The translations under genes and the position numbers were made by a program. A stretch of 63,916 nt of DNA, the filler included, from Intoshia linei (taxonomy: Eukaryota > Animalia > Orthonectida): the NCBI GenBank assembly GCA_001642005.1. It is 7 parts of 7 records of this genome, joined end to end, with 100 filler letters (N's around TTAATTAATTAA, not from the genome) between each part and the next. Parts side by side here need not be neighbours in the genome. Positions count along the whole stretch, not along the records: positions 39,291 to 52,655 come from LWCA01001016.1; positions 52,756 to 57,755 come from LWCA01001840.1; 5 more parts are not named here. One strand, given 5' to 3'. Shown here piece by piece: positions 46,629 to 52,949 of the stretch (positions within the stretch are counted from its first letter, which is position 1; every line of letters starts with the position of its first letter). Under the pieces are notes generated by a model. The model was not told the DNA's origin and made no database searches. It worked only from the letters and a program-made list of their open reading frames with translations.

Positions 46629-47822
46629 ATGACTTCAATAAATGAAATTGAATATAAAACCTTTGAAAATACAGATTATTTGATATACAAATTGTTACTA
46701 TCAACAGTTTCAGGAAAACCGATATTGATAAACTCAATAAGTAAAAATGAACTTTCTGGGATACAATTATATGAAGTATGTTTGATAAGACTTGTAGACA
46801 AATTGACGAATGGGTCTGAATTTATAATATCTCCGGATGGTACTAAATTGACCTATAAGCCTGGTTTACTGATTGGAGGTAAATTTGATTTCAAGTGTAA
46901 CAAGGAAAAATCTATATCATATTACCTGGAATTGGTAATGTTATTATCCCCCTTTTGTCGTGATGAAGTACAGATAAAATTTAATGGAGTATCACACAAG
47001 GAAGAAGAAAAAACAGTAGAATTTTTGAATATCACAATGACTAACTTCATGAAAACATGTTTAAAAAATATTCATGGTGAATCCATCGCTAATGTAAATA
47101 TTAATCAAGTAAAAAATTCCACATATCCTTGTGAATTGGGTATTGTCAAGTACTCGTATACGCATGAACTTGGAGCTCAAAGAATTGAACCACTTTTGTT
47201 TCAAAAATTTGGAAAGATTTCAAAATTAGTCATTTCATATTGGCGTAAAAATGTTCCACAAATTATAATCAATGAAAATATCCAATGCGTCAAAGACAAA
47301 TTGACAAATTTTCTTCCTTCTCATGCTATTAGAGCGGTAGAATTGTCTGGATCTCGAAAATTTGCTAAAGAATCTAAAGAAGGCATCGAAACCTGTAATA
47401 ATGCTTTTGGGTTTATAATTCATGCAGACACAAAGTACATGAGAGTTGCTTCTGAACATACGTGTTTTTCTTTAGGGTCTCAGGCTAATGTAACAAGGAT
47501 TCAAGATATGCATGGTCAAATCATTCAAATTGGAAATGAGGCTCTCAAAACATTTTCACAGAGTTTATTTTATAATGGAGCCATATCTCCAGATGATCAA
47601 GTTTGTTGTTTACTGTTTATGAGTCTTTCATATGGAGATATTTCAAAGTGTGTAATGGGACCTCTAACGAATGATTCCATTTCTTTTCTGCGTTTAGTGA
47701 AGATATTCCTTAATGTGCGTTTCAAAATTGACAAAGAAAACGAAAATGATAAATACAATTTACATAATTATCTCAGTTGTCGAGGTATACAGTACGTTAT
47801 ACCCACTTGTTCAAATTTTTAA
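46629..47822 (+). CDS. RCL1: RNA 3'-terminal phosphate cyclase-like protein (intronless)
   Basis: LLLSTVSGKPI, GIQLYEVCLIRLVDKLTNGS, YKPGLLIGG, SISYYLE..LSPF, GDISKCVMGPLT..FLRLVKIFLNVRF, LSCRGI; first in-frame ATG at 46629. Confidence 0.92.
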   Translation: MTSINEIEYKTFENTDYLIYKLLLSTVSGKPILINSISKNELSGIQLYEVCLIRLVDKLTNGSEFIISPDGTKLTYKPGLLIGGKFDFKCNKEKSISYYLELVMLLSPFCRDEVQIKFNGVSHKEEEKTVEFLNITMTNFMKTCLKNIHGESIANVNINQVKNSTYPCELGIVKYSYTHELGAQRIEPLLFQKFGKISKLVISYWRKNVPQIIINENIQCVKDKLTNFLPSHAIRAVELSGSRKFAKESKEGIETCNNAFGFIIHADTKYMRVASEHTCFSLGSQANVTRIQDMHGQIIQIGNEALKTFSQSLFYNGAISPDDQVCCLLFMSLSYGDISKCVMGPLTNDSISFLRLVKIFLNVRFKIDKENENDKYNLHNYLSCRGIQYVIPTCSNF

Positions 47823-47839
47823 TGTATATTATAATTTAT

Positions 47840-48600
47840 TTATACCAATGTAATTTCATTGTCTGAAAATTTCAAAATTTGTGGGTTGCATACCAGTATT
47901 TTGTTTAATAATCTATCTATGTAATTCTTCTTTTTTTCGTTTTCTAAATCTTTATTTAGGTAATTTAATTTTGTGATTAAATCATGAGTAAAAGTTGCTA
48001 AATCGTAAATATGAATGTTAATATTCATGTACCTCTTTGTTCATGGCATTACAATTTACAAAACTAGAATCGTTGTTTTCTATAGTGGTAGCAGCGATTG
48101 CCATTGTACATTCGGCTACAAATAAAAGTACATTAGTTTTTTAAGGAAAGTTATTAAGCCAGCTAGTTTGAATCTAAAAATATACTTAAATTTTGTATCG
48201 GTAGAGCATGTTGAGATTTTTCTTTTTTTGGTATGGTTACATTAAATCCAGCTTTGTGAATTGTCTTTTCTTTGATATTAGATACCAAAAGACGTTTAAA
48301 ATCTTTAAAATAATTGACTTGTTCAGAGAAATTTCGACTAGTTGAAGAATTTTCTATTTGAAGTTTACAACATTCACGCAAACTAGGTTTTGATATTCTG
48401 ACACAAAATGTTTTATATATCATATCATAACTTTTATAACGTTAGGTTGGATGCATCTTTGCATTTATTCGACCTTCTCGTCTGTATAAACGGACAATAG
48501 TTTGAACACTAATTCGTGGGCGACTTAACATATATGCTATTTCAGCAATTATTCTTCTCGTGTCATTTGATATTCTAGTTTTTAAACGTTGAGGTATTAA
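47840..48600 (-). pseudogene. Tandem unit 1: Tc1-like HTH + FIP-RBD-like coiled-coil fusion, disabled
   Basis: KTRISNDTRRII..EIAYML..VQTIVRLYRREGRI and YDMIYKTFCVRISKPSLREC align with ORF 50000-50437; 3' exons ECTM..NAMNKE|QLLLMI*..YIDRLLNKILVCNPQIL; contains stops and deletions. Confidence 0.75.
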
Positions 48601-49103
48601 TGATCAACTGTATTACAATATTTGATGGCGAAAATGAATTGACTTAGTGACTATTCGTCACTGACGAATATTACTTTATTCAACATGAAATAATGTATAC
48701 AATATATTTGTGGCAGGTTTAAGTGACCTATAAATTAATCAGAAGACCAGTCCGTTTATTCTACCGATTTCTCTAATTAGTATTAATAATTAATTTCTCT
48801 TCGACTAATTAACTGATTTTCAGTAAATAGAAAAAATTAAAGTTATGACTAACAGCGTTATGCCTAGTCTTTAAAAACTAGCATTATGCTTACTCGCTAC
48901 CGTACATATTTGAACATTTCTAAAAATATTTTAATTTCAATAACCGTAAAATTGGCCTATCTCGTAGGAGATTGTTCGCATTCATAATTCTATTTAGTCA
49001 TTGTATACGACATATTTTTAAAATGTTTAATGTATTTTAATGTGTTTTTTTTTGTTAATAATTTTAACAAAATTTTAATTTTTGTTTTCAGAAACGTTCA
49101 ACT

Positions 49104-50437
49104 TTACTGCCAGTAAATTACTGGTTTAATTTTATTAATCAGTCTGTTAATATAGTTTTTCTTTTTATGATTATCAGTTTCCAATTCTTTGAGACGACAA
49201 TCTAATTTTGTAATTTCATTTTCTTGTGATTCTATCATAAGTAAAAGTTGCTAAAAAAGTATATAATATTTGATGCATATTTAGAACATTTTTATTCATG
49301 GAATTGTAATCGTTTTTTAAACTGTTTATGCTACATTCTGTGGTGCTTTCGATTGTTGGGATTGTACACTCGGCTAAATTTTAAAAGTTATGTGCACGTT
49401 AAAACGGAAATTCAAATTTTTAATTTTAATTTCTGGTAAGTTGGAAAAATTATATGTACAGTAATAAATAGGTGACTGTACTGTTTCATCTAACTTATCA
49501 GTTGGTACTCCATGTTTAGAGTATAGAGCAGGGGTTCCCAAGTGGGCGATATTGCTCCAGGGGATTAATTCAGTTAGGGGGCGATTTTAAAAAATATGAT
49601 ATAGTACTAGTATATAGAGTGAGGCGTTGATTAATTTTTTGGTTGTAAGAGTAGATTTTTATAGCAAGTTTGGGATTCACTGAGATAAACAGTGATCCAG
49701 TAATAAATATATAATTTTGATTAATATTAAACATAGACTTCGGAAATATTTCATAATCAGTTGAATCAAAAAAAATTTTGTTAATTAATAATTATAACTT
49801 TACTCAATAATAATTGAGTACATTTTTACATAAAAATGTTTTCATTGGGCCGTTAAAAAAATATATTGCTAAAAAGGGGGCGATATACCAAATCAGTTTT
49901 GTAACCCCTAGTCTAGAGTCTACAATCTAGATTGATTCATCATGTAAACGTTAAATGTAATTAAAATTAAATGGGTTCGTGTTGAATATTTTTCAACAAT
50001 TACGAAAGAGACATAAATCTAACAAAAATACATAAAATTTTACAAATTAGAGGAGGCCTTGTTTTGGATTGAAATTTGCGGCATTGACGTAAACTCTTCT
50101 GTGATAATTTCACATTAAATTTTTTATAAATTAAATCGAACAATTCGTTAGATGAAATGTAGCGGTATTCTTTTGAATTTTCTATAAAATTTTGAATTTC
50201 ATCTGTTATTTGTCTATTTCTATGTTCTTCACGTCTTTTTAACTGTATTTGAGATTCTCGTTTATAATATTTAACAATGTAATTCACGTTTTCTTGAGGG
50301 AGATTTAGTTCTAATGCAATTGAATATACTGTCGAACCTTTATTGTAAGATTGCACTATTTTTTTTCTAGTTTCTTCTGATATTAAAGTTTTGACCATTG
50401 GTTTAACTATAATTAAATTATCTAAAAAACTATCCAT
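49104..50437 (-). CDS. Tandem unit 2: predicted 208-aa fusion of a Tc1/IS630-type bipartite HTH and a FIP-RBD-like coiled coil (exons 50437-50044, 49373-49288, 49250-49104)
   Basis: ISEETRKKIVQSYNKG..SIALELNL..NVNYIVKYYKRE is a transposase HTH without a DDE domain; phase-1 donor at 50043 fits the phase-1 acceptor at 49374; YNSMNKN|QLLLMIESQENEITKLDCRLKELE..NYINRLINKI. Confidence 0.6.
49529..49910. mobile_element. Buster/Charlie-type hAT MITE inside unit 2
   Basis: TIR caggggttcccaa / ttgtaaccccta; TSD gtatagag/gtctagag. Confidence 0.85.
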
Positions 50438-51214
50438 TGTAGTATCCTTAGGAATGATATATAAAATAATCTCATTGGTTACAAAGTAGCCAGATATAAA
50501 GTTAAAGAGTCACTATAATTTTATCGTATTTTATTGTTTATTTTTAAATGTGTGTATTGAATGAGTTTATAATTAAAAATAGTATCCTAAATAATACAAT
50601 TTTGGTTTATTATTTTTTGTCTTTAAAATTGTAATTTCAGCGAGGTTTTCCATAATGATAATAAATTAAATTATTTAAATAAAAATTGGCCTATCTTGTA
50701 GGAGATTTCTCGTATTACTTTTTCTATTTAGACTAAATTTTAGCAACCTTGCGCGTCTCGTGGGCCACTTTTTTTTTATCAAAAAATTTTACGAGCCCCA
50801 TTTTTGAAAATTTACACATGATAAATTTCAATTTTAAATGAAGAACATTAAATGACACAAAATTGGAAATAGCTTAATTGATAAAAGATAAAAAGTTATA
50901 TTTGTTTTTATCAGATATTATGTAAATATTAAGTTATTGTCTTGTCTCAATATTCATGCGTTTATCAAATTTTCAATTCTATTTATATTTTTTTTAATAC
51001 TATAAAAATCTATTTTTTAAATAAATGCTTTATTTTTTGTGATATACCCCATCAACGAATCTTTATCAACTTTCTTACTATGATTAAATACTATCATCGT
51101 TCAATTAATTTAATACATAATAGAATATTATCATTACCCTCAGTTTTTGGGGCACTTTTCAAAAAAGGTGCCCCAACACGAGGTTATACTGTATTACAAT
51201 TTTGACAAAAAATT

Positions 51215-51510
51215 AATTTTGCGTTTTCAAAAACGTTAAATATTTATGGGTTACATACTATAATTTTATTTAAGTCTTTCAATATAGTTTTTCTTGTGTC
51301 ATTATCACCTTCCAAGTCTTTGATGCGACAATTTAATTTTGTAATATCATCTTCTTGTGATTCTATAAAGTAAAAGTGGCTAAAAAGGTAAATAATATTT
51401 GATGTATATGTATAACATTTGTATTCATGGAATTGTAATCGTTTCTTAAAATGTTTGTGCTACATTCTTTTGTGGTGTTTTCGATCGTTGACATTGTACA
51501 CTCGACTAAA
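51215..51510 (-). pseudogene. Tandem unit 3: frameshifted copy of the two 3' (FIP-RBD-like) exons
   Basis: High nucleotide similarity to 49090-49375 with the same intron position; ..NYIERL..NKIIVCNP*. Confidence 0.8.
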
Positions 51511-52949
51511 TTTTAAATTACAATATTAAAATTTATGTGCACATTAAAACGGAAATTTAATTTTTAATCTGATAAGTTCTAAAAATTATATGTATAGTAA
51601 TAACTTGTAGTAATATAGATCAGTGGTTCCCAAAAAAATATATTGTCGACCCCCCTAACAGTACACAAATATTTTTAGAGAAGATCAATTAATACAAAAT
51701 AGTGAATATGTTTATTATATGATTATAACAGCTTTAAACAAATGTTATCTTTTAATATTAATATTACTGGTTTTATTTTAGTTATAAATCATACTTTCAT
51801 ATAGTTGACACCCTAGTTACTAGGGCCTAGTATACAAAAAATTGTAAAGTTATGATTGTTCTTTTTTGTTTATATACGTGTTATTGTCTCGTAAGGGTTA
51901 ATAACATTTAAATTTATTATAATCCAAAATTAATCTATAAATAAATTATTTATAAATTTTATATTTGTATAATTGATGCAACTAAATTGACATTTCAAGT
52001 GACAATGTGTACTTTGTTTAGTCTAAAATTTAGATTACATTATAAAATCGAACAATAACTATTGTTCGGAATAAACATTATAAATTATAATGTTTAGTCA
52101 ATAATTATTGACTAAAATTACTTCGTGACTAAATTCATTTTACTTGTATATGTAGTACCCAGTAGCGGATCTAGGTGGGGTGCAGGTCAGTCGCCCCTGG
52201 CGATATACATGTGCCAAATAATATTTTAAAGTGTGTATTAACATTGTAAAAAATTAAAAAAATGTTCTAGGACCCATCGTTTACAATAATCATTTATCTA
52301 TGTATTATTTTTTATGCTAATAACATCAGTTTAATAATCGGATCTAAAGTTATTACTTTAAAATAAATGCGAATTCAAGTTAGTCAGTACTTCATTTGTA
52401 ATATGGAAGTGTTTCTTAACTGATGTATAACCAGTGTATAATATATAACTTATACCACGACTCTTAGGTGTATATTCCTCACCCTGTAGTACCTTGTATT
52501 TATGATTTAAAAAAAAAGTTAACACACCAATATACACACGAGAAATACGACATAAATAAATTATCAAATTTTCTTTAAAATTAACTTTGCAATGTATTAA
52601 AAAAATTAAGTTATGACAAACAGCGTTGTGCCTGGTTTTTAAAAATTCACTCTAANNNNNNNNNNNNNNNNNNNNNNNNNNNNNNNNNNNNNNNNNNNNT
52701 TAATTAATTAANNNNNNNNNNNNNNNNNNNNNNNNNNNNNNNNNNNNNNNNNNNNTATACAAAATAAATTAAATTTTGCTTATTATTCATATTTTGAAGT
52801 GCTTTGCCCCAGAGTTTTTTTAATCTTTTTTATATAATTTTGTGATAATTGTGTATCATTCAATCCCATCTTCCACGTATGGGGTGACACTTTTGTATTT
52901 TCGCAAAAAAGTGCACACCCCTAATGTATATAATAGAAAAATGTAAATT

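What the first reader, a model, noticed from the sequence alone, without database searches (positions are those of the whole stretch)
47840..52650. Tandem array of chimeric genes: transposase DNA-binding domain fused to a Rab11-binding (FIP-RBD)-like domain
Seen: three tandem minus-strand units share the same two 3' exons and intron position (about 47840-48115, 49104-49373, 51215-51510) and share upstream blocks (48951-48997 with 50683-50730; 48832-48880 with 52600-52645). Units 1 and 2 begin with a Tc1/IS630-type bipartite HTH, with no DDE domain and no TIRs seen. Established: the FIP-RBD (Pfam RBD-FIP) motif reads roughly YxxLxxxELxxL..coiled coil..YIDxLLxxIxxxxPxIL (Rab11-FIP3 YIDRIIVAIMETNPSIL, from memory). 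Here the exons read YNSMNK(N/E)QLLLMI..YIDRLLNKILVCNPQIL. Inference: a lineage-specific family made by exon capture that couples a transposase HTH to a dimerising or Rab11-binding coiled coil, possibly a transposon repressor, a new transcription factor or a DNA-to-trafficking link. Unit 2 can be spliced to an open 208-aa product. I know of no described protein with this architecture.
Basis: partly seen in the sequence, partly recalled or inferred. Interest (0 to 1): 0.85.

Follow-up and report, generated by a model that had tools for sequence, protein, structure and literature searches.

The report
Transposase DNA-binding domain fused to coiled coil
In the parasitic worm Intoshia linei, an unannotated gene splices the DNA-binding head of a Tc1-type transposase onto two short coiled-coil exons; the transcript is real, but the proposed link to Rab11 trafficking is not established.

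Summary
The piece is the whole 13,365-nt contig LWCA01001016.1 of Intoshia linei, an orthonectid. Nothing is annotated over 47840-52655.

Three minus-strand units share two short exons and a 35-37 nt intron, and units 1 and 2 have a Tc1-like bipartite HTH upstream.

One 650-nt contig with no mismatches covers the full 208-codon ORF of unit 2.

Units 1 and 3 are dead as coding copies. Unit 1 is still transcribed and spliced.

The HTH exon is a true transposase DNA-binding domain. No DDE domain or convincing TIR is left.

The Rab11-FIP reading is weak:
- Pfam RBD-FIP scores 15.4 bits against a cutoff of 23.3.
- It hits only the out-of-frame unit 1 copy.
- FIP3 chains in the PDB score E about 0.5-1.2.
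- The one intact copy has lost the NPxIL half of the motif.

Verdict: this is a lineage-specific host-transposase fusion family, a known kind of gene birth. It probably encodes a dimeric DNA-binding protein. Interest is moderate.

The parts
50044..50447 (-). Unit 2 exon 1. ATG at 50437. 131 codons plus 1 nt encode a bipartite (PAI+RED-like) Tc1-type HTH. Donor GT at 50043-50042.
   Evidence: X1 record 2 runs 50447..50044 with 0 mismatches. Pfam HTH_SB E 3e-5. Sleeping Beauty PAI subdomain E 3.3e-4. BLASTP E 4e-11 to the Thelohanellus Tc1-like transposase P0047, residues 37-138. AF2 pLDDT 80.5 with six helices. Best folds are Pax6/Pax5 paired domains, with the SETMAR and Tc3 DNA-binding domains further down the list (ranks 7 and 16).
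49374..50043 (-). Unit 2 intron 1, 670 nt, phase 1. It contains GC-richer dispersed-repeat blocks.
   Evidence: Joint 50044>49373, ends CT..AC on the plus strand (GT..AG on minus), in all 3 runs.
49288..49373 (-). Unit 2 exon A, 86 nt (linker ending in ..DYNSMNKN).
49251..49287 (-). Unit 2 intron 2, 37 nt.
   Evidence: Joint 49288>49250 in 2-3 contigs of each run.
49091..49250 (-). Unit 2 exon B. 48 codons then TAA at 49104-49106. Heptad-periodic helix with Asn at one core position. The C-terminus reads NYINRLINKIKPVIYWQ.
   Evidence: X1 record 2 reaches 49091. Alignments. A profile of the three units hits the MITF zipper and cortexillin/GCN4.
48186..48998 (-). Unit 1 first exon as transcribed. 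Decayed HTH at 48603-48445 and 48441-48187, with an in-frame stop at 48442-48444. Donor after 48186, phase 1.
   Evidence: X1 record 1 and X3 record 16 are contiguous here with 0 mismatches. tblastn 30% identity to unit 2, E 4e-8. Pfam HTH_SB E 0.0026.
48033..48115 (-). Unit 1 exon A, 83 nt, preceded by a 70-nt intron (48116-48185).
   Evidence: Joint 48186>48115 in 3 runs. Translation.
47789..47997 (-). Unit 1 exon B, after a 35-nt intron (47998-48032). An alternative acceptor lies at 47943. It is dead in the frame set by exon A. The FIP-like peptide NYIDRLLNKILVCNPQIL is encoded at about 47873-47926 in another frame.
   Evidence: Joints 48033>47997 (3 runs) and 48033>47943 (2 runs). Frame. 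Pfam RBD-FIP E 0.017. FIP3 alignment with 10 of 24 residues identical.
51417..51505 (-). Unit 3 exon A homologue, 89 nt. No HTH is detectable upstream.
   Evidence: tblastn finds no HTH in 51606-52655.
51240..51379 (-). Unit 3 exon B homologue. It carries 2-nt deletions and a TAA at 51244-51246 where unit 1 has CAA. An internal donor at 51309 is spliced to 50406 in one contig.
   Evidence: Joint 51309>50406 in X2.
48948..48997 (-). Upstream block shared with 50682-50731.
   Evidence: 84% over 50 nt, E 1.6e-9.
48782..48877 (-). Upstream block shared with 52556-52645.
   Evidence: 76% over 96 nt, E 1e-11.

Best explanation
This is a tandem cluster of a lineage-specific host-transposase fusion gene in Intoshia linei.

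Origin. In an ancestor of the cluster, the N-terminal paired-like DNA-binding domain of a Tc1/IS630-type transposase came to be spliced, through a phase-1 intron, onto two small exons that encode a linker and a heptad-periodic helix. The catalytic domain and the transposon ends were lost. The whole unit then duplicated in tandem at least twice.

State of the copies. The middle copy, unit 2, is intact and makes a spliced mRNA with a 208-codon ORF. Unit 1 is transcribed and spliced but broken by a stop in the HTH, a stop in exon B and a 16-nt deletion. Unit 3 has lost its HTH and carries frameshifts. More strongly represented paralogues exist elsewhere in the genome.

Inferred function. The product would be a small sequence-specific DNA-binding protein that pairs through its C-terminal zipper-like helix. 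It would act either as a repressor that occupies the ends of cognate Tc1-like elements or as a recruited transcription factor.

Shown here: the architecture, the homology of the HTH, the splicing and the decay of two copies. Inferred: translation, dimerisation, DNA binding and biological role.
For: - Identity of the contig and absence of annotation.
- Splicing: five GT..AG joints on the minus strand in three runs, including 50044>49373 and 49288>49250. A 650-nt contig with 0 mismatches spans ATG to stop of unit 2.
- The patchy coverage and co-occurring unspliced forms show these contigs are cDNA-type.
- HTH homology. Paired-like fold.
- No DDE remnant.
- Units 1 and 2 both join HTH to exon A in phase 1 at the homologous acceptor. 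The fusion therefore predates the duplication.
- Frameshifting indels that can be polarised with unit 1 fall mostly on unit 3. Unit 2 keeps 624 nt open in a genome of about 25% GC.
- The helix has an unbroken a/d heptad pattern, and the three-unit profile hits leucine zippers.
Against: - There is no direct sign of purifying selection. Unit 2 versus unit 3 identity is 90% and 81% in the exons against 88%, 86% and 81% in the flanks and intron.
- Two of the three copies are dead.
- The C-terminus of unit 2 has itself been rewritten relative to units 1 and 3.
- The transcripts include read-through and inter-unit splices, such as X2 record 8. Expression could therefore be noise.
- The runs are not on record as RNA, and contigs give neither strand nor level.
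- No homologue in any other species was found.
- The dimer prediction gave no verdict.
Confidence: 0.6

Rival explanations
1. Expressed junk. The cluster is a decaying transposon-derived or pseudogene array. Unit 2 is open only because it is young, and the spliced RNAs are by-products of pervasive transcription in a compact genome, so no functional protein is made.
For: Two of three units are broken. Exons are no better conserved than intron or flanks between units 2 and 3. Read-through and inter-unit joints exist. Unit 2 has lost the ancestral C-terminus. There are no orthologues.
Against: A 208-codon open frame in DNA of about 25% GC is very unlikely without constraint. About 9% of random codons would be stops, which is my estimate. 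Splice sites and intron phase are kept in the old unit 1 and in unit 2. The polarisable frameshifts fall on unit 3 and not on unit 2. Paralogous exon-B and exon-A contigs stand at high depth.
Confidence: 0.27
2. The 3' exons are a true Rab11-binding FIP-RBD captured from a Rab11-FIP gene, so the family links a DNA-binding head to Rab11 or endosomal traffic.
For: The C-terminus inferred as ancestral is NYI(D/E/N)RL(L/I)NKI(L/I)VCNPQI(L/F). Units 1 and 3 share VCNP and all three share NYIxRL. It aligns to human FIP3 YIDRIIVAIMETNPSIL with 10 of 24 residues identical. The Pfam RBD-FIP hit has E 0.017. The motif sits at the extreme C-terminus after a coiled coil, as in FIPs.
Against: The score is below the Pfam gathering score (15.4 against 23.3) and covers only profile positions 20-39. 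PDB E-values are 0.5-1.2, beaten by an unrelated enzyme. The three-unit profile does not find FIPs. The Atlas gives no usable hit. In unit 1 the motif is out of frame. The intact unit 2 lacks NPxIL and has YIN in place of YID. A nuclear DNA-binding head and a Rab11 effector tail make no obvious functional sense together.
Confidence: 0.1
3. An independent Tc1 fragment lies next to an unrelated small coiled-coil gene that starts at the ATG in exon A, which is present in units 1 and 3. On this view the fusion is only apparent.
For: Exon A of units 1 and 3 carries ACAATG at the same place. A weak 26-nt inverted pair (77%) flanks the HTH of unit 2 at 49784-49809 and 50555-50580.
Against: Spliced contigs join HTH to exon A in both units 1 and 2, at the homologous acceptor and in the same phase. 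That ATG is lost in the only intact unit. Inverted pairs of that quality are common here, with 39 in 5.6 kb.
Confidence: 0.03

Closest known systems
Host-transposase fusion genes made by transposase capture, such as SETMAR and KRABINER (Cosby et al., bioRxiv 10.1101/2020.05.07.082677)
   Same: A DNA transposase DNA-binding domain is joined by splicing to non-transposase exons. The catalytic activity or mobility is lost. A Tc1/mariner-type HTH is the captured part.
   Different: Here the partner is only about 76 residues of linker plus coiled coil, not a KRAB, SET or SCAN domain. The gene is found in an orthonectid, is tandemly triplicated with two dead copies, and has no shown orthologues or function.
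Tc1/Mariner HTH captured by F-box genes in Caenorhabditis (PMC12062965)
   Same: An invertebrate, multicopy, lineage-specific family built on a captured Tc1/mariner HTH.
   Different: The partner domain differs: coiled coil here, F-box there. I read only the abstract of that paper.
Tc1-like DDE_3 transposases, such as Thelohanellus kitauei KII71436.1 (P0047)
   Same: The bipartite HTH is 27% identical over 102 residues, E 4e-11.
   Different: There is no DDE_3 domain and no TIRs. The domain is spliced to foreign exons.
Rab11-FIP3 Rab-binding domain (PDB 2d7c, 2hv8, 4d0m; Pfam PF09457)
   Same: A C-terminal YID..hydrophobic..NPxIL motif follows a coiled coil, seen in unit 1 and in the inferred ancestral sequence.
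   Different: The similarity is sub-threshold. The motif is out of frame in unit 1 and half lost in the intact unit 2. No C2 domain, EF-hand or other FIP part is present.
Truncated, DNA-binding-only transposase repressors such as the P-element KP protein (from my own knowledge)
   Same: A DNA-binding domain plus a dimerising segment, without catalysis, would compete for transposon ends.
   Different: KP arises by internal deletion of the element itself. Here the tail comes from separate exons, and no cognate active element is known.

Membership tests
Tc1/mariner (IS630-Tc1-mariner) transposase | N-terminal bipartite paired-like HTH DNA-binding domain | tested here: met
   It is sub-threshold for Pfam HTH_SB (24 bits against 43). 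BLASTP to a DDE_3 transposase gives E 4e-11, and the top fold matches are Pax paired domains, with SETMAR and Tc3 DNA-binding domains lower in the list.
Tc1/mariner (IS630-Tc1-mariner) transposase | DDE/D catalytic domain (Pfam DDE_3) | tested here: not met
   tblastn with six full-length relatives finds only the HTH in the 13.4-kb contig. A 10-residue collinear match in unit 1 (IHKAGFNVTI against VDEVGFNVSM, E 0.42) is at most a vestige.
Tc1/mariner (IS630-Tc1-mariner) transposase | Terminal inverted repeats flanking the ORF | tested here: not met
   One search shows only AT-rich pairs of 72-90% complementarity, no better than background.
Rab11-FIP Rab-binding domain (PF09457) | Match to the family profile at or above the gathering score | tested here: not met
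   Unit 1 scores 15.4 bits against 23.3, E 0.017. Unit 2 has no hit at E up to 1.
Rab11-FIP Rab-binding domain (PF09457) | YID core and NPxIL tail at the extreme C-terminus of a translated product | tested here: not met
   The motif is present in unit 1 DNA but out of frame. The translated unit 2 has YIN and no NPxIL.
Rab11-FIP Rab-binding domain (PF09457) | Binding to GTP-bound Rab11 | not testable with these tools
   No Rab11 of this species was available by reference, so no complex job was possible.
Rab11-FIP Rab-binding domain (PF09457) | Parallel coiled-coil homodimer | tested here: inconclusive
   Two copies of exon B scored 0.03 against a mark of 0.32, which the tool reports as no verdict. 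The heptad pattern was seen only by eye.
Host-transposase fusion gene | A mature transcript joins a transposase domain to non-transposase coding exons in frame | tested here: met
   with frames.
Host-transposase fusion gene | Immobilised: no catalytic domain and no ends | tested here: met
Host-transposase fusion gene | Maintained by purifying selection or conserved across species | tested here: inconclusive
   One search shows no excess exon conservation between units 2 and 3. No orthologues were found. Paralogues elsewhere in the genome could not be read.

The most novel reading that the evidence does not exclude
The ancestral and still intact paralogues elsewhere in the Intoshia genome carry a working FIP-type Rab11-binding tail on a transposase-derived DNA-binding head. 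That would be a protein tethering DNA or chromatin, or transposon ends, to Rab11 membranes, or a Rab11 decoy. No such architecture is known in any organism.
Probability: 0.08. Interest if true: 0.8.

Novelty: new member of a known kind. Interest (0 to 1): 0.42.

Why it matters
Orthonectids have among the smallest and most reduced animal genomes. A young, multicopy, expressed gene family born by transposase capture shows that gene birth continues even there.

The locus holds one live copy and two dead ones side by side, which gives a compact natural series for studying how such fusions arise and decay.

It is also a gap in the public annotation. The region is currently treated as an intron of a mis-modelled RCL1 gene.

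The Rab11 idea would be striking if it were true, but at present it rests on a short sub-threshold motif.

Tried and rejected
- Word-indexed homologue searches with the HTH ORF and with exon B of unit 2 found nothing.
- Exact look-ups of the RCL1 ORF and the 145-residue ORF were not on record.
- The Atlas search with the unit 1 C-terminal ORF gave no usable hit.
- A profile of the three C-terminal exons against PDB found zipper coiled coils and no FIP.
- The homodimer job on exon B gave no verdict, with a score of 0.03. It is evidence neither for nor against dimerisation.
- Pfam on eight other ORFs of the contig found nothing. No tRNA and no Rfam family was found.
- I tested whether the start of the unit 2 intron is homologous to the longer first exon of unit 1. 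Similarity fades right after the shared ..SLR(Q/E)C(R/C)K(F/L)Q.. codons, so this is undecided.
- I considered a ciliate-type genetic code because unit 3 has TAA where unit 1 has CAA. I rejected it because the 397-codon RCL1 ORF encodes all its Gln with CAA/CAG and ends at TAA.
- The joined 208-residue model was not sent to any search, fold or look-up.
Full report
**What the piece is.** A word-indexed search with the neighbouring 397-codon ORF (46629-47819, plus strand, Pfam RTC E 2e-26) returned a 99% identical protein named as a putative RNA 3'-terminal phosphate cyclase-like protein of Intoshia linei. The protein sits on contig LWCA01001016.1 of GCA_001642005.1, which is 13,365 nt, exactly the length of the piece. 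Window coordinate equals contig coordinate plus 39290. The piece is about 25% GC. Four genes are called on the contig, and none covers 47840-52655 on the minus strand. The deposited RCL1 model spans 46629-48987 and departs from the simple ORF at residue 342. In the public annotation, unit 1 of the finding therefore lies inside a probably spurious RCL1 intron.

**The observation.** Self-BLAST and a MAFFT alignment confirm three homologous minus-strand units. Each has an exon A of 83-89 nt, an intron of 35-37 nt and an exon B.
- Units 2 and 3 are 79% identical over 425 nt, including flanks.
- Unit 1 is much older: 61-66% identity in the exons.
- Upstream of exon A, unit 2 has an intact 131-codon exon and unit 1 a decayed homologue. 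The unit 1 copy is 30% identical, carries two deletions and has one in-frame stop at 48442-48444.
- Unit 3 has no detectable HTH.

**The HTH is a transposase DNA-binding domain.**
- Pfam gives HTH_SB at E 3e-5, below the gathering score.
- phmmer against PDB gives the Sleeping Beauty PAI subdomain at E 3.3e-4.
- An exhaustive phmmer search of 1.84 billion representatives gives 39 hits, none closer than 68 bits. The single-stretch ones are short HTH proteins and DDE_3 transposases about 330 residues long. Named examples are Tc1-like transposases of Thelohanellus kitauei, a Smittium paired-domain protein and a microsporidian protein.
- BLASTP to the full-length Thelohanellus transposase P0047 (Pfam DDE_3 E 5e-27) aligns residues 19-119 of the exon to residues 37-138 at E 4e-11. 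This covers both HTH subdomains.
- An AlphaFold2 model has pLDDT 80.5 and six helices in two three-helix bundles. Its best PDB matches are the Pax6, Pax5 and Prd paired domains. The SETMAR (rank 7) and Tc3 (rank 16) DNA-binding domains also appear, among other HTH proteins, all at weak E-values of 0.007 or more.
- tblastn with six transposases finds no catalytic-domain remnant on the contig. No credible TIR flanks the exon.

**Transcripts.** No RNA run is on record for this stretch. Three runs of one 2024 study hold 30-39% of its words. Laid on 47700-52655, their contigs are patchy in coverage and carry precise excisions with GT..AG ends on the minus strand, so they are cDNA-type assemblies. 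That is my inference.
- Joints seen in all three runs: 50044>49373 (670 nt), 49288>49250 (37 nt), 48186>48115 (70 nt) and 48033>47997 (35 nt).
- An alternative joint 48033>47943 appears in two runs.
- X1 record 2 is 650 nt, has no mismatches and runs 50447-50044, then exon A, then 49250-49091. That is the whole unit 2 mRNA from 10 nt before the ATG to 13 nt past the stop.
- Phases fit: 394 nt, then 86 nt, then 147 nt, giving 208 codons.

**Unit 1 and read-through transcripts.** Unit 1 is also transcribed. It is contiguous from 48998 to 48186 and spliced in phase 1 to the homologous acceptor. Its exon B reads QLLLMI then stop, and it carries a 16-nt deletion.

One X2 contig of 1,823 nt chains several parts together. 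It joins part of unit 3 exon B (donor at 51309) to an acceptor at 50406 inside the unit 2 first exon. It then continues through unit 2 and unspliced spacer into the unit 1 exons. Read-through and inter-unit splicing therefore occur.

Contigs 85-90% identical to exons A and B stand at higher word depth than the locus's own contigs, so paralogues are expressed elsewhere in the genome. Contigs cannot give strand, ends or level.

**Order of events.** Units 1 and 2 both have HTH, a phase-1 intron and exon A at the same acceptor, and unit 1 is the oldest copy. The fusion therefore existed before the duplications. This argues against an independent Tc1 insertion beside a separate gene.

Exon A of units 1 and 3 has an ATG that unit 2 lacks. 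A still older stand-alone small gene is possible but not needed.

**The 3' exons.** Exon B of unit 2 is a helix-like sequence with hydrophobic residues at unbroken 3-4 spacing over about 4.5 heptads and an Asn at one core position. I read this pattern by eye.

Comparing the three units in their ancestral frames gives a common C-terminus of NYI(D/E/N)RL(L/I)NKI(L/I)VCNPQI(L/F). All three units share NYIxRL, and units 1 and 3 share VCNP(Q). The FIP-like motif therefore belonged to the ancestor and is not an accident of one dead copy.

It aligns to human Rab11-FIP3 with 10 of 24 residues identical. The statistics are weak, however:
- Pfam RBD-FIP gives E 0.017, 15.4 bits against 23.3, covering profile positions 20-39 only, and only for unit 1.
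- phmmer against PDB gives E 0.5-1.2, behind a chance match to 4-hydroxyphenylpyruvate dioxygenase.
- A three-sequence profile finds the MITF zipper and a cortexillin/GCN4 peptide, not FIPs.
- The Atlas gives nothing.

In the only translated copy, the last seven codons have been replaced (..NKIKPVIYWQ) and YID has become YIN. In this locus, no product with a complete FIP-like tail is made.

**Is unit 2 under selection?** Exons are no better conserved than intron and flanks between units 2 and 3. Unit 3 is a pseudogene, so this says little.

Indels that can be polarised with unit 1 fall mainly on unit 3: a 3-nt insertion and two 2-nt deletions. One falls at the very end of unit 2. A 624-nt open frame in 25% GC DNA is unlikely without constraint, but I could not compute a proper test. 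The dimer prediction gave no verdict.

**Verdict.**
- The thing is a lineage-specific, unannotated host-transposase fusion family: a Tc1-type DNA-binding head plus a short zipper-like tail, with one live and two dead tandem copies.
- This is a new member of a known kind of gene birth (10.1101/2020.05.07.082677; PMC12062965).
- The Rab11-FIP reading remains a lead only. I put it at about 10% for homology of the ancestral tail, and lower for function.
Exons were treated separately by reference.

Noticed in passing
window 46629-48987 (+): The deposited Intoshia linei RCL1 model (P0040, 380 aa) follows the single ORF 46629-47822 for 341 residues. It then jumps to a far exon near 48886-48987, across unit 1 on the other strand. 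The plain ORF already covers the whole Pfam RTC domain, so the model is probably mis-spliced.
   Followed up: partly
window 47789-47945: A cDNA-type contig of unit 1 (X3 record 15) reaches 47789, past the RCL1 stop at 47820-47822. The two convergent genes therefore overlap at their 3' ends.
   Followed up: no
window 50795-50844: A segment of about 50 nt stands at word depth up to about 2,500 in 8-21 different contigs that diverge on both sides. It is a dispersed, heavily represented short repeat. On the minus strand it is followed by a GT and an Sm-like AAAATTTTTTGA, reminiscent of a spliced-leader RNA gene. However, the shared part does not end at that GT, the fold z-score is -0.12 and Rfam finds nothing.
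   Followed up: partly
window 49520-49930: GC-richer blocks with C and G runs inside the 670-nt intron of unit 2 attract many variant contigs and odd joints. They are probably another dispersed repeat or MITE.
   Followed up: no
window 51309 to 50406: One contig (X2 record 8) splices a donor inside unit 3 exon B to an acceptor 31 nt inside the unit 2 coding exon, in frame with the HTH. The same contig has a join that goes back from 49288 to 51379. This could be inter-unit splicing, a copy-number difference between samples or an assembly chimera.
   Followed up: no
protein hits P0001, P0002, P0004, P0030: The best-scoring relatives of the HTH exon in the 1.84-billion-protein library are proteins with 7-11 tandem copies of a PAI-like HTH. 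One has an ankyrin-like N-terminus. They are arrays of transposase-type HTH repeats of unknown function.
   Followed up: no
runs X1-X3: Runs labelled with two different coded organisms (A and B) hold contigs identical to this Intoshia contig over more than 1 kb of non-coding sequence. One label may be the host or a mixed sample.
   Followed up: no
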